Positions 1 to 14,816 of a stretch of DNA of 14,816 nt are shown here, piece after piece. The notes below the pieces were generated by a model, which saw only the letters and a list, made by a program, of their open reading frames with translations, had not been told where the DNA came from and searched no databases. Source of the stretch: Lepidodermella squamata (lineage: Eukaryota; Animalia; Gastrotricha); the NCBI GenBank assembly GCA_047495785.1, contig JBLDXI010000149.1:1-14816 (forward strand), given 5' to 3'. Made by a program: the position numbers and the translations under genes. Every line of letters starts with the position of its first letter. The first letter of the stretch is position 1.

Positions 1-3000
1 TCCAGAGTTTCGCTGAATTGCTTCATTCTGCAAAATATATACAAATTAAATTTTTCAGACTAAAATTAATTTCAATTTCAATTCAATTATTTCAATGAAC
101 CAGCCAATCAAATTAATAATCAATTTCAATCATTTCAATTAATTTCACATTTTCAAATTAAAATTTTTCTCAAATTAAATTGTTCGTTAATTTTCAATGA
201 TTTTTATGAAAATAAATCTTACACGTCAGGTGAGCTGTTCTGTGAATTCTGAACCAGCCACGGGATATATCGACCCAGCGATCGAGGATCAGCACTAGTC
301 GCATCAGCCAGCAGACAGGAAGCAATTTGAGCAACCATCGACTTGATATAACCTCCTCCAACATCTTCCAATAACGGCGTTTCCAGGCCCTTCAACGCAA
401 CTTTCATGTTAACAATCGCATGCAAATCGGTAACGAAATTCATTAGATCAGTCAAATACGGCTTCAGGAGATCTGCGACATTCGCTGGGACGGTTAAAGC
501 GCCTCCTGTTAGGGTGACACCATGACTGACGAGAGAATTCGCGTCTAGTGGGACCCCAGAGGCTGGGTCGCAGATTCGTTGATCGAGATGCGATGTCAAC
601 GGCGGGCTGATACGGCAAGCATCGAGTGAGATGAACAGTAGCAACGAAACAGCGTTAGCATAATTAACCAGGCCAGTACAACGAATGACGTGTAACATCT
701 CGGCACAGACGAATTGAACAAAAACACGACGATCTCGCTCTTTCGCGTAACAACGGCTAATAGCATTGAATAAATTGACCATAGCCTGGACTGGGATACT
801 TGTATTCGGCTCGTGGAGAATCGCAGCGACCAATTTACAAGCAGCGTCCAGCAAATCGCGACTAGCAATCGGATGCAATAAGCGGAACATATGGCCCAAT
901 ACGTTGAAAATAGTTTTATTCGCTGATTGAAGAATTTGAGGCGATAGGCTCAGCTTCGTCAACAGCTGCGGAACTTGAAGGTCGAGTTCCTCAGACGGCG
1001 GGATGTTTTCCAGGGTCACGTGACTCAAATAAACGTCCAAATTCGCTAGAATTTGATCTGTATTCTCCAGATTCAACGACTTTTTCGAGTTCAGATTTCG
1101 AACTAGATCGAGCAACAACCCGCTATTCGTCAATTCGTGGTAGTCGTGTAAAGATGCGGCTAACGCGCCGAAAAATTGGCGGGGTCTAGAGATTCGACTC
1201 GAGAATAAAAGAGGCACAACTCCGTTCGGCTGAAGTTGACACATCGACATCCGCAAGAATTGTTTCGCGACAGATACGCAATTTCCAGGAATATGAACAT
1301 ACACGTCTTCCTTCTGCCAGAAATATTGGAAGGAATTAGACACTCGAGCGACAATTTGAAGCGCGTCGAGTAATAACGGAGCGGCAAGAGCCGGCTCGCG
1401 ATGCACAAAAGCGCATAGAGACACAATGCAAAGGCCAACGGTTTCGGGCGACATTGATAGAATCGGTTCGCCGCAAATCGAACAGGCCATAGTGCAGCGA
1501 CGGCGGGCTAGGGCTGCGTCGTTATCGTCACTAGCCTGTGCCTGTTGTTGACTAGCGGCGTGGACGCTCGGCGCTTTAGCCATTGAAGTTTTCGTAGCCT
1601 CGACTAGAATATCGCGGAGGCCGCCCTTTTTCTGGCCACCCCGTGGAAATAGCGAGAAGGCTGATTTCGAACTGGTCGAGACATGCCCGATAGACTGGTC
1701 GAGATTGCCATGCGCCTGGGCCTGAACTCCAAAGGCTAGACCCGGCGAAACTGTGCTGGGTAACACATCAGGTTCAGGGGTTGCCGACCATGAAGTTGAC
1801 CCTCTCATATTCGTCAAACTCAACGACCGCTTCAACCCGGGTTGAAAGGCCGCGGAGGAATGGAACGAATAATCGCCGGATGAATGAGCTCCGATACAGT
1901 CGTGAGTAGCTGAATGCAACGTGGCGATAACAATCGTCATCAAGCTAACAATCCCATCCGTGAACAACTGCTCGGTGTTATAGTCGTATTTGTACAGAAT
2001 CGCCGTCAAAGCCATAAGCCAATCACGCCGGATGAAGTGATGTAACGGGGCGAGGGTCGGCGCTTTATTGCTGTCTTCAGTCGATGAAACGCAGCAATGT
2101 TGCATCATGACAAGAATCGCCGGCATTAAAGTTCGGCCAATCTCGAGATTTCGATCGACCAACGCCGGTAATTGGCCCATAAATGCGTTGAAAACAACAG
2201 ATCGGCGAAACCGCTCGGGTTCGACGGTGATATTTCGAACAGTTGGGTTGAAGCCGAGAAGGTGATTCAAAAGGCGAAACAACGAATTCTGCGTTTTGCT
2301 GTCGTGGAAATTATCGCGCGTCGAAGTTGAATGCGCGTGATTTTGGGCACTCGCGGCTGGGCCGTTGTGCCCCGGCGCCGGGATCGGCACCGCACGTTCT
2401 CTCGCCGCCTCTCTCGGTAGGTCACTCATGAATTTCATTAGGAACGTGATAGTCCGATGCATAACCTCTCGCCGTTGTTTGTTCAGCTCAAAGGTTCGAA
2501 AACTAGCCTGTACCAGCGATGAATCGAACGAAGATGGCGGGCTGATATGCTTTTGAAAAACCAAATCTGAAAAATTGTGGAGAAAATCGAATTAACTACT
2601 GGGAACCAACCGCAGTTCAAACACATTCTTTACGGAAATAAAGGTTAAAAATTGATATTATCATTAAATCAGGTTTAAAATTAGATAGAAAAAGCCAGCT
2701 TTAACTTCAGCCTCATGTCGGTGGTGAGTCAACAAATTTCGCCTGGATGATTTTGAAAAAGGTAAAATAAAATTAAAGGAATGATTTTCAAAGAGCAAGC
2801 AGTAATATTTCAGATATAGAATTTCAAGTAACAAAAAGCATGCAAAGCGAATGATTCTTTTTTCGTATTTTCTCTAAAAATGACTGACAACAGTAACTAT
2901 AAATGATTGCGGCAAGCGATCATTTTTACGAGAGTTTCGTATTTTTATGTCAACCTGATCTACAAATGATGCTAAATATGTTTGCGGTCGATAACGGTTG

Positions 3001-5121
3001 CGCGTCTGTATTGTATTTTCAAAATTAAAATTATCAACAAATATTGGACATTAATTCAAAAAACACCCTTAGCTCAGGACGCCGTTATGATTTAGGAGAG
3101 ATCATCTAAAGGCTTGATCTAAACGAACGATATTTACACGTTTTATCTACGATTCTACGACGCCCATTGTAACGATAAATTTACTAGTCGCCGATGTAGA
3201 AGAAGGAGAGGCATTCACCATCGAAGGAGAATGAGCTGGCTGATGTACTGCCGAAGAAAAATTATTCAAAGGTACTCTGATTCGACGAAGTTAGTGAAAG
3301 ATCACTCTAAAACTACACGCCATGCGCTGGAAGGAAACACTTTTTATGGAAAGCATGAAAATTGTTACACGCCAGAAAAAATATTAATAATAAATAGCTT
3401 TAAAACAATTTTTGTCATCAGAAAAAAATTAACATTGTTAAAAAAATAACACGAGGAACAACGTCGTGAAAAAGGCGTCAAATCCGGAGCTTAATTTTCA
3501 CGCTATCATCGCAGATATCAAAAAATCATCTTCAACAAACCGAGTGTAGGAAATAGCGCGACTGCTTACCGAATATGTAAATATGACGTACAAACGTTTA
3601 ATACGTAGTGTGACATTTTATGTTCAAATCGCAAGTGTTTCACATGAGAAAATTACGAGAAAAAAGCTCCACCTTAATTATCTGAATTATCATACCTGCT
3701 GTTAAAAGCTGCTTTTTCGTGATGCTAGCCGATGAAGTCTGGCGGTTTAACGGGCTTGTTGAGTCCTTTCGCTGAGCAGCTTGAACCGAGGCAGCGTCTC
3801 CAGACGTCAAATCTGACAAGGCTAGTTGAAGGCTTCGAATGACAGTAGGATGGGACAGTGCGAAACGAGCTCTGTCCAAACGATTGTCATGTTCGGCAAT
3901 TTCCAGCGGGTCTAACAAATCGCTGCTGGCCTGAATTTCAGCGACTAGCGCGTCGATAAATTGGTAGACCAAGTCCCATGTGATAATCGTGTGGCGGCTT
4001 TGCAACGTCGCTGATAACAGCGATAGGGTGTCCAGAACCGACAGTCGGTCAACGATGCAGTATCTGAACTGAAATAACATCGATTCAACGATAGTTTTGA
4101 TCGAATTCGCCTGCAAAGTGCCGAGTAAAATAGTTGTCCGTTGAACAATCGTCAGATTCAAGTCTCGAATCGAGAGGGCCAGGTGATAAGAAACCAAGGC
4201 GAGGCAAGAGAGTAATTGCTGATTTTTGACAACGTCTTCAAATCTGATGAGATGGCAGAGATTAACCGCACGTTCGACGGCGTCAAATCGGCACAGCCAT
4301 TCGGTGTTGAGAAAATCGCGTTTGATGACGATATCAAAAGCGTGGCGGCAATCGTCGGATAACGTAAGGCATCGCAGTAAACAAGCAACTGCACATCTTG
4401 GGATTTCAGCGTGGCTCGAATCCAAAACTTGCCAAAGCCTAAGAATATCATTTTGATATATAAATTCATCAGAAAAAAAAGAAATCTTACTTTGGCAAGA
4501 ATTTTCCAACCAAAGCCACGCAATTCTCTTTCGTACTTTCAAGGGCCGCATAACGGCGAAGACTGTCATCGTGAGCAATCATCAACTGAAGGCAATCGAG
4601 CAATCGCCAAACAATCGTCGCAGATCCACCGATTGAGCTGATTCCGATACTCGACGAAGCTCCAGGCGTAAGAGACGTTATAAACTTTTCAATCATACAC
4701 TCGAGCAATTTCGGCGCCAATGATGGCGCAACGTTCGATTTAGCTGCTAGCTTCAAAGTCAAAGCAGCCGAGCTAGCACTTGTTTCCAATGTCGCCGTAG
4801 TCGAAGACGATTCAAGACTAGCGTTATTCGTCGCGTCGACATAGTCAAATTTCTGAATTTTCGACGCCTGCCGCTCACACAGCCACCTTAAAACTCTAGA
4901 GTAGGTTTGCAGAAATTCGCCACATCGCTCGCAAGTGAAACAAGCGGCATTAACCGATCCTGGAATCGGCCCATGTGGCTGGTGGGGCCACTTCCAGTCG
5001 ATCATACCGATCAAACACGGCAGAACTTGACTGGCAGATTTGCCCCAGATTGAGTCATGCTTTTGCAACTCGGCCAGTTCCATTTGCCCGATCAACACCT
5101 CCAGCATTAGATTCATCACGT
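1..5121. repeat. Left arm of a large inverted repeat (reverse complement of 6117-11237); runs to the window edge, so it may be longer
   Basis: ORFs lying within this arm have identical translated mirrors whose coordinates sum to 11238 (219..2564- / 8674..11019+, 3640..4578- / 6660..7598+, 3231..3449+ / 7789..8007-). Spot checks at 1-60 and 2581-2640 match exactly. Complementarity ends at 5121/6117 (5122 a vs 6116 g). Confidence 0.98.
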
Positions 5122-6120
5122 AAAACTTGTATTCATTCACGTCTTCGATTTTTCTCTGCTGAGGCGCATTTTGCTTGGCAGTTTCAAAACGGTAGTATTC
5201 CAATATTGACGTATCATAGGGCTGGAAAATGTTTCAAAGAGAATAATAAGCTACAGTTCAACATGCAATCTTTAGGTTTATATAGGCAAGGCAACACGAT
5301 AACAATCTCATTAACCAGGAATTCTACATCTCAAATTTCATTCAAATTCTAAGCGAATTCTACGTCTCAATCGGTAACCTGTAATTAATTGTTAGTTAAA
5401 AAAAATGCTAACTGTATTCCAACTGTATTTAAACGCGCAACTAAGCTATGTATGACTCATTTCAAAACGCTAATGGTTTGGCACTCGAACCTGATAATCT
5501 TGCGGTAGCACGAATTCTGTCTGTTTATAGGGCAAGGAGGTTTTGATTAGTTAGGATTGATTTGTATCTCAGCAACATTTCAAAACTCTTCTTCGAAACT
5601 AGAAAAACTCGCGAATCCTGTCAAACCCTATAGATTGCAATCTTACCGCTAGAATAACAGCATGATCCGCCGACATTTTTTGAATAACCGTCAACGGGAT
5701 GTTTTCCTCGTTGTCTTCGTTGTAATGAACCGAGGCGTGCGCATCTGGCGAGCAGATGTTGGTGATACTCAGCTTGAACATCTTCGTCAGGTGACTCATC
5801 GGCACGGTAATCGACATTGAAGTCAAAATTTGAAGCCACCTTAACGCTTGTTCCTGGACAAGCAGCGAGCCGTATTCCAGGCGCTCCGAGACAAATTGAA
5901 ACATTTGATCGACCGAAAACGGCAGCGTGCCGAAATCGATGTTGAACATTTTTGACAGGAAAAATTTGAATTCTGGCAGCTCAAGCTCCGGCACTTCGGA
6001 CTGGACAGCCTCAAGCCAGTGGGGTATGACCACGTCCCAGATTTCGAATGTGACCAAATCGTAAGGCATCAGGCAGAATAAGCAGTTCAATCCGTGTTTG
6101 ATTTGCTGAACTCGAGACGT
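1..6120 (-). CDS. unc-79: UNC-79 homolog, mirror copy, truncated 5' at the fold-back junction and 3' at the window edge; exons in reading order about 6120..5647, 5221..4491, 4438..3696, [3247..3185], 2566..223, 27..<1
   Basis: Identical translation to the plus copy within the arm, plus extra upstream coding sequence in the spacer (QQIKHGLNCLFCLMPYDLVTFEIWDVVIPHWLEAVQSEVPE...LSKMFNIDFGTLPFSVDQMFQFV), which resembles an internal conserved UNC79 block. May be an artefactual duplicate. Confidence 0.88.
5122..6116. other. 995-bp unique spacer of the palindrome, made of contiguous minus-strand unc-79 sequence (exon 5' end 5122-5221, intron 5222-5646, upstream exon 5647-6116)
   Basis: No mirror copy in the window. 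Minus-strand donor GCG|gtaaga (intron starts 5646) and acceptor attttccag|CCC (exon starts 5221) join in phase 0: ...HAVILA|PYDTSILEYYRF... Confidence 0.9.
5647..6120 (-). CDS. unc-79: Single-copy upstream unc-79 exon, broken at its 5' side by the inversion junction
   Basis: Core of ORF 5599..6198(-). UNC79-like sequence starts at about (T)SRVQQIKHGL; the residues before it are antisense of the right arm. Ends at donor gtaaga (5646). Confidence 0.85.
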
Positions 6121-9100
6121 GATGAATCTAATGCTGGAGGTGTTGATCGGGCAAATGGAACTGGCCGAGTTGCAAAAGCATGACTCAATCTGGGGCAAAT
6201 CTGCCAGTCAAGTTCTGCCGTGTTTGATCGGTATGATCGACTGGAAGTGGCCCCACCAGCCACATGGGCCGATTCCAGGATCGGTTAATGCCGCTTGTTT
6301 CACTTGCGAGCGATGTGGCGAATTTCTGCAAACCTACTCTAGAGTTTTAAGGTGGCTGTGTGAGCGGCAGGCGTCGAAAATTCAGAAATTTGACTATGTC
6401 GACGCGACGAATAACGCTAGTCTTGAATCGTCTTCGACTACGGCGACATTGGAAACAAGTGCTAGCTCGGCTGCTTTGACTTTGAAGCTAGCAGCTAAAT
6501 CGAACGTTGCGCCATCATTGGCGCCGAAATTGCTCGAGTGTATGATTGAAAAGTTTATAACGTCTCTTACGCCTGGAGCTTCGTCGAGTATCGGAATCAG
6601 CTCAATCGGTGGATCTGCGACGATTGTTTGGCGATTGCTCGATTGCCTTCAGTTGATGATTGCTCACGATGACAGTCTTCGCCGTTATGCGGCCCTTGAA
6701 AGTACGAAAGAGAATTGCGTGGCTTTGGTTGGAAAATTCTTGCCAAAGTAAGATTTCTTTTTTTTCTGATGAATTTATATATCAAAATGATATTCTTAGG
6801 CTTTGGCAAGTTTTGGATTCGAGCCACGCTGAAATCCCAAGATGTGCAGTTGCTTGTTTACTGCGATGCCTTACGTTATCCGACGATTGCCGCCACGCTT
6901 TTGATATCGTCATCAAACGCGATTTTCTCAACACCGAATGGCTGTGCCGATTTGACGCCGTCGAACGTGCGGTTAATCTCTGCCATCTCATCAGATTTGA
7001 AGACGTTGTCAAAAATCAGCAATTACTCTCTTGCCTCGCCTTGGTTTCTTATCACCTGGCCCTCTCGATTCGAGACTTGAATCTGACGATTGTTCAACGG
7101 ACAACTATTTTACTCGGCACTTTGCAGGCGAATTCGATCAAAACTATCGTTGAATCGATGTTATTTCAGTTCAGATACTGCATCGTTGACCGACTGTCGG
7201 TTCTGGACACCCTATCGCTGTTATCAGCGACGTTGCAAAGCCGCCACACGATTATCACATGGGACTTGGTCTACCAATTTATCGACGCGCTAGTCGCTGA
7301 AATTCAGGCCAGCAGCGATTTGTTAGACCCGCTGGAAATTGCCGAACATGACAATCGTTTGGACAGAGCTCGTTTCGCACTGTCCCATCCTACTGTCATT
7401 CGAAGCCTTCAACTAGCCTTGTCAGATTTGACGTCTGGAGACGCTGCCTCGGTTCAAGCTGCTCAGCGAAAGGACTCAACAAGCCCGTTAAACCGCCAGA
7501 CTTCATCGGCTAGCATCACGAAAAAGCAGCTTTTAACAGCAGGTATGATAATTCAGATAATTAAGGTGGAGCTTTTTTCTCGTAATTTTCTCATGTGAAA
7601 CACTTGCGATTTGAACATAAAATGTCACACTACGTATTAAACGTTTGTACGTCATATTTACATATTCGGTAAGCAGTCGCGCTATTTCCTACACTCGGTT
7701 TGTTGAAGATGATTTTTTGATATCTGCGATGATAGCGTGAAAATTAAGCTCCGGATTTGACGCCTTTTTCACGACGTTGTTCCTCGTGTTATTTTTTTAA
7801 CAATGTTAATTTTTTTCTGATGACAAAAATTGTTTTAAAGCTATTTATTATTAATATTTTTTCTGGCGTGTAACAATTTTCATGCTTTCCATAAAAAGTG
7901 TTTCCTTCCAGCGCATGGCGTGTAGTTTTAGAGTGATCTTTCACTAACTTCGTCGAATCAGAGTACCTTTGAATAATTTTTCTTCGGCAGTACATCAGCC
8001 AGCTCATTCTCCTTCGATGGTGAATGCCTCTCCTTCTTCTACATCGGCGACTAGTAAATTTATCGTTACAATGGGCGTCGTAGAATCGTAGATAAAACGT
8101 GTAAATATCGTTCGTTTAGATCAAGCCTTTAGATGATCTCTCCTAAATCATAACGGCGTCCTGAGCTAAGGGTGTTTTTTGAATTAATGTCCAATATTTG
8201 TTGATAATTTTAATTTTGAAAATACAATACAGACGCGCAACCGTTATCGACCGCAAACATATTTAGCATCATTTGTAGATCAGGTTGACATAAAAATACG
8301 AAACTCTCGTAAAAATGATCGCTTGCCGCAATCATTTATAGTTACTGTTGTCAGTCATTTTTAGAGAAAATACGAAAAAAGAATCATTCGCTTTGCATGC
8401 TTTTTGTTACTTGAAATTCTATATCTGAAATATTACTGCTTGCTCTTTGAAAATCATTCCTTTAATTTTATTTTACCTTTTTCAAAATCATCCAGGCGAA
8501 ATTTGTTGACTCACCACCGACATGAGGCTGAAGTTAAAGCTGGCTTTTTCTATCTAATTTTAAACCTGATTTAATGATAATATCAATTTTTAACCTTTAT
8601 TTCCGTAAAGAATGTGTTTGAACTGCGGTTGGTTCCCAGTAGTTAATTCGATTTTCTCCACAATTTTTCAGATTTGGTTTTTCAAAAGCATATCAGCCCG
8701 CCATCTTCGTTCGATTCATCGCTGGTACAGGCTAGTTTTCGAACCTTTGAGCTGAACAAACAACGGCGAGAGGTTATGCATCGGACTATCACGTTCCTAA
8801 TGAAATTCATGAGTGACCTACCGAGAGAGGCGGCGAGAGAACGTGCGGTGCCGATCCCGGCGCCGGGGCACAACGGCCCAGCCGCGAGTGCCCAAAATCA
8901 CGCGCATTCAACTTCGACGCGCGATAATTTCCACGACAGCAAAACGCAGAATTCGTTGTTTCGCCTTTTGAATCACCTTCTCGGCTTCAACCCAACTGTT
9001 CGAAATATCACCGTCGAACCCGAGCGGTTTCGCCGATCTGTTGTTTTCAACGCATTTATGGGCCAATTACCGGCGTTGGTCGATCGAAATCTCGAGATTG

Positions 9101-11940
9101 GCCGAACTTTAATGCCGGCGATTCTTGTCATGATGCAACATTGCTGCGTTTCATCGACTGAAGACAGCAATAAAGCGCCGACCCTCGCCCCGTTACATCA
9201 CTTCATCCGGCGTGATTGGCTTATGGCTTTGACGGCGATTCTGTACAAATACGACTATAACACCGAGCAGTTGTTCACGGATGGGATTGTTAGCTTGATG
9301 ACGATTGTTATCGCCACGTTGCATTCAGCTACTCACGACTGTATCGGAGCTCATTCATCCGGCGATTATTCGTTCCATTCCTCCGCGGCCTTTCAACCCG
9401 GGTTGAAGCGGTCGTTGAGTTTGACGAATATGAGAGGGTCAACTTCATGGTCGGCAACCCCTGAACCTGATGTGTTACCCAGCACAGTTTCGCCGGGTCT
9501 AGCCTTTGGAGTTCAGGCCCAGGCGCATGGCAATCTCGACCAGTCTATCGGGCATGTCTCGACCAGTTCGAAATCAGCCTTCTCGCTATTTCCACGGGGT
9601 GGCCAGAAAAAGGGCGGCCTCCGCGATATTCTAGTCGAGGCTACGAAAACTTCAATGGCTAAAGCGCCGAGCGTCCACGCCGCTAGTCAACAACAGGCAC
9701 AGGCTAGTGACGATAACGACGCAGCCCTAGCCCGCCGTCGCTGCACTATGGCCTGTTCGATTTGCGGCGAACCGATTCTATCAATGTCGCCCGAAACCGT
9801 TGGCCTTTGCATTGTGTCTCTATGCGCTTTTGTGCATCGCGAGCCGGCTCTTGCCGCTCCGTTATTACTCGACGCGCTTCAAATTGTCGCTCGAGTGTCT
9901 AATTCCTTCCAATATTTCTGGCAGAAGGAAGACGTGTATGTTCATATTCCTGGAAATTGCGTATCTGTCGCGAAACAATTCTTGCGGATGTCGATGTGTC
10001 AACTTCAGCCGAACGGAGTTGTGCCTCTTTTATTCTCGAGTCGAATCTCTAGACCCCGCCAATTTTTCGGCGCGTTAGCCGCATCTTTACACGACTACCA
10101 CGAATTGACGAATAGCGGGTTGTTGCTCGATCTAGTTCGAAATCTGAACTCGAAAAAGTCGTTGAATCTGGAGAATACAGATCAAATTCTAGCGAATTTG
10201 GACGTTTATTTGAGTCACGTGACCCTGGAAAACATCCCGCCGTCTGAGGAACTCGACCTTCAAGTTCCGCAGCTGTTGACGAAGCTGAGCCTATCGCCTC
10301 AAATTCTTCAATCAGCGAATAAAACTATTTTCAACGTATTGGGCCATATGTTCCGCTTATTGCATCCGATTGCTAGTCGCGATTTGCTGGACGCTGCTTG
10401 TAAATTGGTCGCTGCGATTCTCCACGAGCCGAATACAAGTATCCCAGTCCAGGCTATGGTCAATTTATTCAATGCTATTAGCCGTTGTTACGCGAAAGAG
10501 CGAGATCGTCGTGTTTTTGTTCAATTCGTCTGTGCCGAGATGTTACACGTCATTCGTTGTACTGGCCTGGTTAATTATGCTAACGCTGTTTCGTTGCTAC
10601 TGTTCATCTCACTCGATGCTTGCCGTATCAGCCCGCCGTTGACATCGCATCTCGATCAACGAATCTGCGACCCAGCCTCTGGGGTCCCACTAGACGCGAA
10701 TTCTCTCGTCAGTCATGGTGTCACCCTAACAGGAGGCGCTTTAACCGTCCCAGCGAATGTCGCAGATCTCCTGAAGCCGTATTTGACTGATCTAATGAAT
10801 TTCGTTACCGATTTGCATGCGATTGTTAACATGAAAGTTGCGTTGAAGGGCCTGGAAACGCCGTTATTGGAAGATGTTGGAGGAGGTTATATCAAGTCGA
10901 TGGTTGCTCAAATTGCTTCCTGTCTGCTGGCTGATGCGACTAGTGCTGATCCTCGATCGCTGGGTCGATATATCCCGTGGCTGGTTCAGAATTCACAGAA
11001 CAGCTCACCTGACGTGTAAGATTTATTTTCATAAAAATCATTGAAAATTAACGAACAATTTAATTTGAGAAAAATTTTAATTTGAAAATGTGAAATTAAT
11101 TGAAATGATTGAAATTGATTATTAATTTGATTGGCTGGTTCATTGAAATAATTGAATTGAAATTGAAATTAATTTTAGTCTGAAAAATTTAATTTGTATA
11201 TATTTTGCAGAATGAAGCAATTCAGCGAAACTCTGGAGCATATTCGATGCCTGTCATGGCTTTTAATCGGCGCTCTGAGCCAAATGGCACTAACTGCCCG
11301 GCCCTGTGCGCCAATCCCAACTGATATGCACAGCCGAGTTTCCGATCAAATCCTCCTAGTCCTATCATCCTACGTCGATCACGAGACGGCCTCAGTCGCT
11401 CATATGACAGCGCTATTTCATGCTTTTCTACTCTGCGAATTGTGGACACTTTACGTGGAGCAACTCGTCGTTTATTCGCCGACTTCCCCATCACCGCTCT
11501 CAGGAACAGGCCACATTTGCACTTCTGCATCTGAATTCTGGGCCAAAGTCACGCCCACCTTAATTCATCTGTTCAGCGTTACGGGCGAGCGATTGACCGC
11601 TCGTCTAACTGAGTTATTCACCCTGCACTTCGTAAATTTGATCGAGTCACTACAACGAGCTCGATCGTCGACTCTGGCTAGTCTAATGCCACTCTGGTCG
11701 CCGATTTTATTCTCAGCCTTTTCGGGCACGCTCTCTGGCAATACGAATGTCCGCCTTCAAAATGTTTTAAGCTGGATGCCCCCGGCGCCGGGTGATGTTT
11801 TCACATTGCTGCCAGATCGAGAAACAATCGCACCAAGCGATTCGGCCTACAACATCTTGGCTTGTTTGGCAAAACTACGCTTTAAATTATCGCAAATCGA
11901 GGTTCAATCTTCGGCTGCCGTTCGTTTGTACCGCGTTTGA
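6117..11940 (+). CDS. unc-79: UNC-79 homolog (NALCN channel complex subunit), 5'-truncated copy; join(<6117..6747,6800..7542,[7991..8053],8672..11015,11211..11940)
   Basis: Segments recognised from memory as UNC79-like: MLEVLIGQMEL, PKLWQVL...WLCRFDAVERA, FNAFMGQLPALVDRN, RDWLMALTAILYKY, CSICG...ETVGLCIVSLCAFVHREPALAAPLLLD, HIRCLSWLLIGAL, and C-terminal QIEVQSSAAVRLYRV. All GT-AG junctions keep frame: 6748-6799 (AA|G), 7543-8671 (G|AT), 11016-11210 (GT|A). From ATG 6122 the join is 4443 nt (1480 aa) without the optional exon. Confidence 0.93.
7991..8053 (+). CDS. unc-79: Candidate 63-nt in-frame unc-79 cassette exon, (V)HQPAHSPSMVNASPSSTSAT(N); mirrored at 3185-3247 on the minus strand
   Basis: Acceptor ataatttttcttcggcag| and donor |gtaaat; phase 1 at both ends, matching flanking exons; no stop codon; more GC-rich than the surrounding intron. 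Confidence 0.6.
11016..11210 (+). repeat. Very AT-rich intron with degenerate AATTG(A) low-complexity repeats (mirrored at 28-222)
   Basis: Runs such as aattgaaatgattgaaattgatt and aattgaattgaaattgaaattaatt. Confidence 0.55.
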
Positions 11941-12329: not shown

Positions 12330-14668
12330 ATGGCTTTGGCTGATTTGCCGTGCTACACCTTGATCCACGCTTCTGCCGATCAGGAGCCGATCAATGAGAT
12401 GAACATCCGTCAAACCTTCGAAAAGGGACGCCCTAACGAGAAAGCCGATGCTTTGAAACGCGTCATCGTCGCCATCATCGCTGGTGAAAAAATGAGCCCT
12501 TCCATGCTGATGGCTGTGATCCGCTTCGTCATGCCCACGCACGATCATTTGATCAAAAAATTGCTGTTGATTTTCTGGGAGGTTGTGCCGAAACACGGCG
12601 CCGATGGCAAGCTGTTGCATGAGATGATTTTGGTCTGCGATGCCTATCGTAAAGATCTGCAGCACCCTAACGAGTTCTTGCGTGGCTCAACTTTGCGTTT
12701 TCTGTGCAAGTTGAAGGATCACGAGCTGCTTGAACCACTCATGCCGGCTATTAAGGCCTGCTTGGACCATCGCCATTCATACGTTCGTCGCAACGCTGTT
12801 ATGGCTATCTTCACTATTTACAAGTAAGTCGAAAAACTCTACATTTTCAAAGTGAAATGCATTACTTCAAATTTGAAGCCAGCTTTATCAGTGACTTCTT
12901 GAATTGATTAAAATCGCTTAAATGTTCTTTTTAATTACCTAAATTTCAAGAAAATCACGAACTTCTTGCGAGTCTTGAAAAAATCGTCGGCCAGTTTTTA
13001 ACCACAGGTAGCTCTTAGGTATGGCTAACGCCAGGTAAAATTGTGCTCTTATCGGGTCATCTACTGTTTCGTAGCAAAAATTTCAAATGCCTTCGATCAC
13101 AACCCTGATTTGACCTTGCGAGAAAGCATCAATTATTTCGATTTTATGGGATTTTGATCATCAATCGGCCCAAGAATATATTTTTCGTAGAATGCCTAGT
13201 AAAATCGCTAAAACCCTGATATTTTTCAGTAAAAAATTACAAAGAAGTTTAATATAATTTTGTAATCAGAGCAGCCTGGTTCTTCGACCTAATTTCTTAA
13301 GGTTGACATTTTTAAAATATTTTTAATTAAAATTTTTGAATATTTTTCAATCTATACCATTATTTTTTAATTTATTCTATTTTTTTATAATTATAATAAT
13401 TTTCCAGGAATTTCGAGTTCTTGATCCCCGATGCTCCAGAGTTGATTTCCAACTTTCTGGACACCGAACAAGACGCGTCATGCAAACGCAACGCCTTCAT
13501 GATGCTGATCCACGTTGATCAGGAACGCGCGTTGGGCTACCTGTCGCGCTGCATGGACCAAGTCGGCCAGTTCAACGACATCCTCCAACTCGTCATTGTC
13601 GAACTGATCTACAAAGTGTGCCACAACAACCCGTCGGAGCGCGCTCGCTTCATCCGATGCGTCTACAACCTGCTGTCGTCATTGAGCCCCGCTGTTCGTT
13701 ATGAAGCCGCCGGCACCCTGCTCACCCTCAGCTCGGCACCTACAGCTATTAAGGCGGTCGCCAGTTGTTATATCGAACTCATTGTGAAAGAGAGCGATAA
13801 CAACGTGAAACTCATTGTTTTGAACCGATTGATTGAAATGAAGGAAGATCCTGTGAAAGAGCGAGTTCTGCAAGACATGGTTATGGATATTCTACGAGTC
13901 CTTGGCTCGTCCGATCTCGAGGTTTGCCGTAAGACACTGAACCTAGCCCTTGATTTGGTCACGGCTCGAACTGTCACTGAAATGGTGATGGTCCTGCGGA
14001 AGGAGGCTATCAAAACCGCGAGTGCTGTTGAGCAGGAAGAGAACGGCAAATTCCGCCAGTTGCTGGTCCGAACCCTGCATCAGTGTTCGTGCCGCTTCCC
14101 GGAGGTTGCTGCCGCTGTAATCCCAGCTCTTTCCGATTTCTTGACCGATCAGCAAGACACAGCGGCTGGTGATGTTATGCTGTTCTTCCGCGAGGCCGGA
14201 CATCGTTTCGAGCACCTTCGCCCTATTGTTGTATCGAAAGTCCTCGAGGTGTTGCCGTCGGTTAAAAACGTTAAAATTTTCCGATCTGGCCTGTGGATTC
14301 TCGGCGAGTATTGCCGATCTGCCGAAGACATTCAGGCGGTCATGTGCGTTGTCCGCCAGACCCTAGGCGAGCTGCCGATTGTTGAAGACGAATTGAAACG
14401 CGCGGCTGGTGACAATAAGGAGGAAGAAGTCGCTCAGGTTGCGGCGGTTGGCCCGAAGAAGCTGGTCACGGAGATGGGTACGTACGCTACGCAGACGGCG
14501 TTTTCGGTTAAGCAGAGCCAGGCGGCGTCGCAGCGAAACAAGGACAGGCCGCCACTTCGCAAGTTTTTGATGGAGGGCGATTTCTTTATTGGCGCCGCGT
14601 TGGCTACTGTTCTGTGCAAGCTGGCCTACCGCTTCCAGAAATCGACCGATCACAAGAAGCTGAAGAAT
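12330..14668 (+). CDS. COPB1: Coatomer subunit beta (beta-COP), 3'-partial; join(12330..12823,13408..14668), 585 aa, continuing past an intron that starts at 14669
   Basis: Highly conserved beta-COP motifs: [119 protein letters not shown]. Intron 12824-13407 (AA|gtaagt...tttccag|G) joins YK-NFEFLIP in frame; next donor AAT|gtgagt at 14669. Confidence 0.97.
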
Positions 14669-14816
14669 GTGAGTTTTATTTTTTTGACTTTCCCATTTTC
14701 CCAAAATAACAAATTTTTCGAAGAAAACCAGGTAAACCCCCGATGTTAACTGTTTCGGTAAATTTATCGGTATTATACGAATTTCTCCCGTATTTTCTTT
14801 ACTCCTGTTTCCAAAT

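What the first reader, a model, noticed from the sequence alone, without database searches (positions are those of the whole stretch)
1..11237. Palindrome of at least 11.2 kb (5121-bp arms, 995-bp spacer) duplicating most of unc-79 head-to-head
Seen: the arms share one coordinate offset throughout (no indels) and give identical translations; the intron stretches I spot-checked also match. I did not compare every base. Inference: this lack of divergence means either an artefact (whole-genome-amplification chimera, fold-back long read, misassembly) or a very recent or gene-converted inverted duplication such as a breakage-fusion-bridge product. Artefact is more likely because both copies lack the 5' end of the gene and no promoter or first exon lies between them. 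If real, it would be a hairpin/cruciform-capable locus carrying truncated unc-79 copies.
Basis: partly seen in the sequence, partly recalled or inferred. Interest (0 to 1): 0.75.

Follow-up and report, generated by a model that had tools for sequence, protein, structure and literature searches.

The report
Fold-back copy of a truncated unc-79
A stretch of an invertebrate nerve-channel gene (unc-79) is joined to a perfect mirror-image copy of itself at one break inside an exon, which most likely arose during DNA amplification, sequencing or assembly and is not a real feature of the animal's genome.

Summary
Bases 1-5121 and 6117-11237 are exact reverse complements (0 mismatches, no indels) around a 995-base spacer. 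The DNA is from an unnamed small-intron invertebrate, not human.

The spacer is not neutral. Read on the minus strand it is the next upstream piece of unc-79: an exon matching human UNC79 residues 542-662, a 425-base GT-AG intron, and the start of the exon that runs into the left arm. Spacer plus left arm is therefore ordinary collinear gene, and only one join is abnormal: 6116/6117. There the antisense of one exon is fused to the middle of a Tyr codon of the next, with no inserted bases, no repeat and no mobile element.

The first ~530 codons of unc-79 are absent. The left arm is cut by the window start, so its outer edge is unseen. The right copy runs on to the stop codon and into a beta-COP gene.

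This is the shape of a polymerase strand-switch chimera, such as phi29 amplification makes. Natural fold-back duplications have the same shape, and no reads or second assembly could be reached.

My reading is about 75% technical artefact and about 15% real recent duplication. First-stage notes, unchecked by me, list several similar open-ended palindromes on other pieces of this genome.

The parts
1..5121 (-). Left arm. unc-79 gene body on the minus strand (exons and introns, about residues 702-2101 of Haliotis unc-79), collinear with the spacer. Cut by the window start.
   Evidence: exact reverse complement of 6117-11237; tblastn of unc-79 orthologues, minus-strand matches 5110-255.
5122..5221 (-). 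Spacer, part 1. This is the 5' part of the exon that continues into the left arm. The arm border 5121/5122 falls inside a Tyr codon, and an AG acceptor lies at 5223-5222.
   Evidence: sequence read on the minus strand; ORF 4487-5203 minus, open across the border.
5222..5646 (-). Spacer, part 2. A 425-base GT-AG intron of unc-79, phase 0 on both sides.
   Evidence: gtaaga donor at 5646, ttttccag acceptor ending at 5222.
5647..6116 (-). Spacer, part 3. unc-79 exon fragment covering the end of the Pfam UNC-79 domain, human UNC79 residues 542-662 and Haliotis residues 535-664. It is present once only. The similarity begins exactly at the junction.
   Evidence: PF14776, E 2.9e-19, profile positions 472-525 of 526; 7w7g_A, E 3.6e-31, query residues 28-148; seven orthologues, matches start at 6111-6123.
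6116..6117 (.). The only novel junction. On the plus strand it reads ...GAACTCGAG|ACGTGATGAA..., which is the antisense of the spacer exon fused to the second base of a Tyr codon of the next exon. There are no inserted bases. ACGT and CTCGAG are both self-complementary. In the right copy the exon frame meets TGA at 6107-6109.
   Evidence: sequence; homology ends here.
6117..11237 (+). Right arm. The same unc-79 gene body on the plus strand. Main coding blocks lie at about 6117-6700, 6700-7595 and 8665-11016, with the start of the last exon from about 11194.
11238..11940 (+). Rest of the last unc-79 exon and the stop codon (Haliotis residues 2113-2344). Single copy within the window.
12330..14816 (+). 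Neighbouring gene, coatomer beta subunit (beta-COP). It starts at ATG 12330 and has exons at about 12330-12827 and 13421-14749. It is incomplete at the window end and is not part of the palindrome.
   Evidence: Adaptin_N, E 4e-39 and 1e-62; coatomer beta hits up to 66% identity.

Best explanation
The record has the form rc(S+A) + A + B, where S is the spacer, A the arm and B the rest of the gene.

Most likely it is a technical fold-back chimera. A polymerase copying the antisense strand of unc-79 left its template and resumed on the opposite strand 995 bases away. The resulting molecule doubles back on itself. Displaced 3' ends do this during phi29 whole-genome amplification, and hairpin self-priming during library preparation can do it too. 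One or a few long reads of such a molecule were then kept by the assembler as a short piece or a contig end.

Shown: the exact arms, the single mid-exon junction, the missing 5' third of the gene, and the open-ended left arm. Inferred: that the switch happened in vitro, and that the true locus reads X-S-A-B (X being the missing upstream sequence).
For: 1. The arms show 0 differences in 5121 bases, introns included.
2. Only 6116/6117 is non-collinear. Minus-strand spacer plus left arm form a normal exon / 425-base GT-AG intron / exon series. The unc-79 similarity begins exactly at the junction in human UNC79 and seven other orthologues.
3. The junction fuses the antisense of one exon to the middle of a codon of another. 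It has no filler, no repeat and no mobile-element end, and the 470-600 upstream residues of every orthologue are absent.
4. The left arm is cut by window base 1, and the whole window (14.8 kb) is on the scale of a single long read. That the window is a whole piece is my inference.
5. The geometry matches published MDA chimeras. In that study 85% were inverted and most joined points under 10 kb apart, with numbers falling off with distance (PMC1855051). Palindromic reads made up 25-38% of MDA nanopore reads of tardigrades (PMC13265396). Assemblies of amplified DNA carry false inverted duplications (PMC6218980).
6. Unchecked first-stage notes on the same genome list at least six more palindromes. 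These have identical or near-identical arms of 'at least' 4-8 kb, spacers of 0.7-4 kb and spans under 20 kb. One follow-up judged a fold-back there a probable assembly error.
Against: - I do not know how this genome was sequenced, or whether any amplification was used.
- Natural fold-back inverted duplications have the same anatomy: an unduplicated spacer of 766 bp to 70 kb and 2-8 bp of inverted microhomology (PMC3907307). The sequence alone cannot separate the two.
- An assembler usually needs more than one read to keep a junction.
- Microhomology at the junction, expected in about 93% of proximal MDA inversions, cannot be checked without the missing upstream sequence.
- No read depth and no second copy of the locus were available.
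Confidence: 0.75

Rival explanations
1. A real, very recent germline inverted duplication made in vivo by a fold-back. A break inside the unc-79 exon left a 3' tail that annealed to itself 995 bases back and was extended, or a replication fork switched templates. The result is a palindrome with an unduplicated spacer.
For: The spacer size (995 bp) lies within the 766 bp-70 kb range of sequenced human fold-back duplications, and a clean junction without filler is typical of them (PMC3907307). The arm starts with the self-complementary ACGT, which could serve as 4-base inverted microhomology. Similar palindromes are noted elsewhere in this genome, which could reflect biology and not method.
Against: Zero divergence over 5.1 kb, so it would have to be extremely young. 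It would break a conserved gene mid-exon and leave both copies without about 530 N-terminal codons. The left arm is open-ended at the window start. Many read-length-scale, open-ended palindromes in one assembly fit a library artefact better.
Confidence: 0.15
2. A pure assembly error with no chimeric molecule. The assembler joined the two strands of the same locus in its graph, or scaffolded two haplotype copies in opposite orientation. The palindromes of the first Adineta vaga assembly arose in this way.
For: The palindromes of the A. vaga AV13 assembly vanished in the chromosome-level assembly and were put down to wrong scaffolding of phased haplotypes (PMC8494291). The structure here lies at the edge of the window.
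Against: There are no N gaps and no repeat at the junction on which a graph could cross strands. The arms are identical and not allelic or diverged. The junction is a sharp base-level join of two unique exon sequences, which points to a template in the reads.
Confidence: 0.07
3. A missed hairpin adapter, or both strands of one molecule read one after the other (PacBio or nanopore read-through).
For: Such reads are perfect palindromes of read length.
Against: They turn at the very end of the insert, so they have no unique spacer, or only adapter sequence at the centre. Here the centre is 995 bases of native gene (exon, intron, exon) with no foreign bases.
Confidence: 0.02

Closest known systems
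Inverted chimeras of phi29 multiple displacement amplification (Lasken and Stockwell 2007, PMC1855051; Pacasus, PMC6218980; tardigrade MDA reads, PMC13265396)
   Same: Two segments of one locus joined in inverted orientation, with breakpoints under 10 kb apart (here 995 bases). The join is sharp with no filler and falls at an arbitrary place in unique sequence. The palindrome is of read-length scale and ends up in an assembly.
   Different: Use of amplification for this genome is not known to me. The 2-21 nt complementarity at the priming site cannot be checked because the sequence upstream of the spacer is missing.
Natural fold-back inverted duplications with a disomic spacer (Hermetz et al. 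2014, PMC3907307)
   Same: An inverted duplication around an unduplicated spacer of about 1 kb, with a clean junction and a possible short inverted microhomology (ACGT).
   Different: The human cases are duplications of 10 kb to tens of Mb, mostly next to terminal deletions, and were shown by copy number and junction PCR. Here there are no copy-number data, the outer boundary is unseen and the arms have zero divergence.
Palindromes of the first Adineta vaga draft assembly (withdrawn in PMC8494291)
   Same: Gene-bearing palindromes in the assembly of a microscopic invertebrate that turned out to be assembly artefacts.
   Different: Those arose from scaffolding of diverged haplotypes. Here the arms are identical and joined without gaps.
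UNC-79, auxiliary subunit of the NALCN sodium-leak channel complex (Pfam PF14776; PDB 7sx3, 7w7g, 7wji)
   Same: The duplicated DNA encodes an orthologue. The Pfam domain end and C-terminal regions align in order with human, mollusc, insect and echinoderm proteins.
   Different: Only about residue 535 onward is present in the window, and the gene is interrupted by the junction.

Membership tests
unc-79 gene (Pfam PF14776 UNC-79; NALCN complex subunit) | Match to the Pfam UNC-79 N-terminal domain above the gathering score | tested here: met
   69.4 bits against a cut-off of 27, but only profile positions 472-525 of 526. The rest of the domain is missing upstream of the junction.
unc-79 gene (Pfam PF14776 UNC-79; NALCN complex subunit) | Collinear similarity to known UNC79 proteins along the body and C-terminus | tested here: met
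   human UNC79, E 3e-58; E 3.6e-31; eight orthologues, blocks in the same order up to the C-terminus at 11937.
WGA (phi29) inverted chimera | Two segments joined in inverted orientation with genomic breakpoints less than 10 kb apart | tested here: met
   the breakpoints are 995 bases apart on opposite strands. Criterion from PMC1855051.
WGA (phi29) inverted chimera | Short complementarity (2 nt or more) between the displaced 3' end and the new template | not testable with these tools
   This needs the true sequence upstream of the spacer, which is absent from the window and from every collection reached. ACGT at 6117-6120 is only a candidate.
WGA (phi29) inverted chimera | Junction absent or rare in unamplified DNA, and the library known to be amplified | not testable with these tools
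   No reads and no assembly record are available. The whole genome is not held.
Natural fold-back inverted duplication | Unduplicated spacer between the inverted copies, hundreds of bp to tens of kb long | tested here: met
   995 bases. The range 766-70,466 bp comes from PMC3907307.
Natural fold-back inverted duplication | Doubled copy number of the arms relative to the spacer, with the junction reproducible in independent samples | not testable with these tools
Missed-adapter or two-strand read-through palindrome | Symmetry axis at the insert end, with no unique genomic spacer (at most adapter at the centre) | tested here: not met
   The centre is 995 bases of native exon-intron-exon.
Haplotype mis-scaffolding palindrome (A. 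vaga AV13 type) | Arms are diverged allelic copies joined through scaffolding gaps | tested here: not met
   0 mismatches and no N in the window.

The most novel reading that the evidence does not exclude
The palindrome is real, and is one of many very young fold-back inverted duplications in this small invertebrate. The animal would then repair broken chromosomes or stalled forks by intrastrand fold-back unusually often, here destroying one copy of unc-79.
Probability: 0.12. Interest if true: 0.5.

Novelty: not a real feature. Interest (0 to 1): 0.1.

Why it matters
If it is an artefact, its value is practical. This piece, and probably the similar palindromic pieces noted in the same assembly, should be flagged or split at the junction, here 6116/6117. 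Otherwise gene counts, duplication estimates and 'truncated unc-79' annotations will be misled.

If it were real, it would be a base-resolved, brand-new fold-back duplication in a non-model animal. Together with its siblings it would hint at an unusual repair habit. Nothing here supports that over the ordinary explanation.

Tried and rejected
**Routes to independent data that failed**
- The window's own genome is not held.
- Two scans of JGI metagenome contigs and two of GTDB genome contigs found no relative. I used the spacer exon as one query and an alignment of the 781-residue exon with its three relatives as the other.
- A word-index protein search with the spacer ORF found nothing in its length range. 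The search with the 781-residue exon found only P0121 at 64-66% identity.
- Exact look-up of nine ATG-started ORFs of the window found none in the collection.
- The notes index held no other note on unc-79 or coatomer and no look-alike by sequence.

**Readings rejected**
- Human origin. The large exons, short introns, ~30% identity to human UNC79 and at most 66% identity to any beta-COP rule it out.
- A role for a transposon or repeat at the breakpoints. None is present.
- A missed-adapter read. The centre is a native spacer.
- A functional head-to-head gene pair with a shared promoter. The spacer is exon and intron of one copy, and the right copy's frame hits a stop three codons outside the arm.

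- I built and searched no joined (spliced) unc-79 model.
Full report
**Observation**

The repeat finder reports one inverted pair in the window: arms 1-5121 and 6117-11237, 5121 nt, 100% complementary, 995 nt apart. My own base-by-base count gives 0 mismatches and no N anywhere. Complementarity ends abruptly at the inner edges, with only 9 of 40 positions matching beyond them. The left arm starts at window base 1, so the outer edge of the palindrome is not seen.

**What the DNA is**

The contig is not human, and I handled it as an invertebrate sequence.
- The exons are large (one open block of 781 codons) and the introns short.
- The 781-residue block matches human UNC79 at only E 3e-58.
- In a scan of 1.84 billion representative proteins its best relative is P0121, an unnamed 802-residue ORF from an ENA metagenome at 66% identity. 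Next comes abalone unc-79 at 35%.
- The downstream gene is coatomer beta. It matches Adaptin_N at E 4e-39 and 1e-62, with best hits of 58-66% identity in molluscs, bryozoans, arthropods and vertebrates.
- Notes of this scan call the genome a small-intron animal.

I searched the exons one at a time by reference. I made no joined spliced model.

**Anatomy**

tblastn of eight unc-79 orthologues gives the same picture each time.
- The arms hold the blocks that correspond to Haliotis residues about 702-2101 of 2344. The left copy is on the minus strand and the right copy on the plus strand, so the copies lie head-to-head.
- 11215-11937 (plus strand) holds the C-terminus, residues 2113-2344, followed by the stop codon.
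- The spacer, on the minus strand only, holds residues 535-664.
- The spacer ORF matches Pfam UNC-79 (PF14776) at E 2.9e-19, but only profile positions 472-525 of 526.
- It matches human UNC79 residues 542-662 at E 3.6e-31, and that alignment begins at the very codon that straddles base 6117. Of the eight orthologues, the seven that match the spacer start their match at 6111-6123.

Read on the minus strand, the spacer breaks down as follows:
- exon from the junction down to 5647;
- a GT-AG intron at 5646-5222 (425 bases, phase 0);
- an exon from 5221 that runs without interruption across the 5122/5121 border, inside a Tyr codon, into the left arm.

Spacer plus left arm is therefore ordinary collinear gene, and the window has the form rc(S+A) + A + B. 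The single non-collinear join is 6116/6117. On the plus strand it reads ...GAACTCGAG|ACGTGATGAA.... In the right copy the exon's reading frame meets TGA at 6107-6109, three codons outside the arm, and what lies further upstream is the antisense of the spacer exon. The junction has no inserted bases, no repeat and no transposon end. The 470-600 N-terminal residues of every orthologue have no counterpart in the window.

**Mechanism**

A join of this kind means that DNA synthesis running along one strand resumed on the opposite strand 995 bases away. That can happen in a test tube or in a cell.

In vitro:
- phi29 amplification yields chimeras of which 85% are inversions, mostly between points less than 10 kb apart and fewer with growing distance. 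About 93% of the proximal ones show 2-21 nt of complementarity (PMC1855051).
- In MDA plus nanopore data of tardigrades, 25-38% of matched reads were palindromic (PMC13265396).
- Assemblies from amplified DNA carry false inverted duplications that vanish when such reads are split (PMC6218980).

In vivo:
- Fold-back repair of a broken end gives inverted duplications around an unduplicated spacer of 766-70,466 bp, with 2-8 bp of inverted microhomology (PMC3907307).

The sequence fits both. The arm begins with the self-complementary ACGT, which would be a 4-base microhomology if the missing upstream sequence ends in ACGT. Without that sequence this cannot be tested. The two codons before the junction (Ile, Thr) align only loosely with Leu-Ala and Leu-Cys in the orthologues, which decides nothing.

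**Why I favour an artefact (about 0.75)**
- The arms show zero divergence, introns included.
- The left arm is open-ended at the window start, and the window is 14.8 kb in all, about one long read. That the window is a whole piece is my inference.
- The junction sits at an arbitrary spot inside coding sequence and would disable a conserved gene, leaving both copies headless.
- First-stage notes on other pieces of the same genome, which I did not check, describe similar structures: 5150-base arms with a 745-base spacer; arms of at least 8.2 kb with a 1.4-kb spacer; at least 8.4 kb with 2.83 kb; at least 7.5 kb with 4.06 kb; about 4.3 kb with 2.6 kb. All span less than 20 kb.
- One follow-up in that genome judged a fold-back a probable assembly error. 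Another found fold-back junctions at short self-complementary motifs and could not tell cell from library.

Many open-ended, read-length palindromes with random junctions are what a library rich in strand-switch chimeras produces.

Two kinds of artefact are disfavoured. A missed adapter or two-strand read-through would leave no native spacer. Mis-scaffolding of haplotypes, as in the first Adineta vaga assembly (PMC8494291), would leave diverged arms and gaps.

**What stays open**

I could not reach reads, the assembly or any second data set of this species.
- The genome is not held.
- Four collection scans found nothing.
- Two further protein searches and nine exact look-ups found only the 66% relative.

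A real, very young fold-back duplication therefore keeps about 0.15.

**Verdict**

The structure is most likely not a real feature of the genome, and its interest is low apart from assembly curation.

Noticed in passing
window 12330-14816 (+): A coatomer beta (beta-COP) gene starts only about 390 bases after the unc-79 stop codon, on the same strand, and runs off the window end inside an intron. The locus is compact.
   Followed up: partly
window 5111-5142 (minus strand): The exon holds two near-identical 11-12-mers 21 bases apart, ACGTGAATGAAT and ACGTGATGAAT. The arm border lies exactly at the start of the second. Each begins with the self-complementary ACGT, which could have served as the landing site of a switching 3' end.
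   Followed up: partly
window 7596-8646 (+), mirrored at 2592-3642: A low-GC stretch (about 35%) between the unc-79 coding blocks has no match to any orthologue. It is probably one long intron or holds small lineage-specific exons. A 72-codon ATG ORF lies on the opposite strand (7789-8007 minus; 3231-3449 plus).
   Followed up: no
protein P0121 and its cluster (ENA metagenome contigs of 5-18 kb): The only close relative of this unc-79 exon (64-66% identity over 781 residues) comes from unnamed metagenome assemblies. A related small animal is therefore present in environmental data but absent from named genomes.
   Followed up: partly
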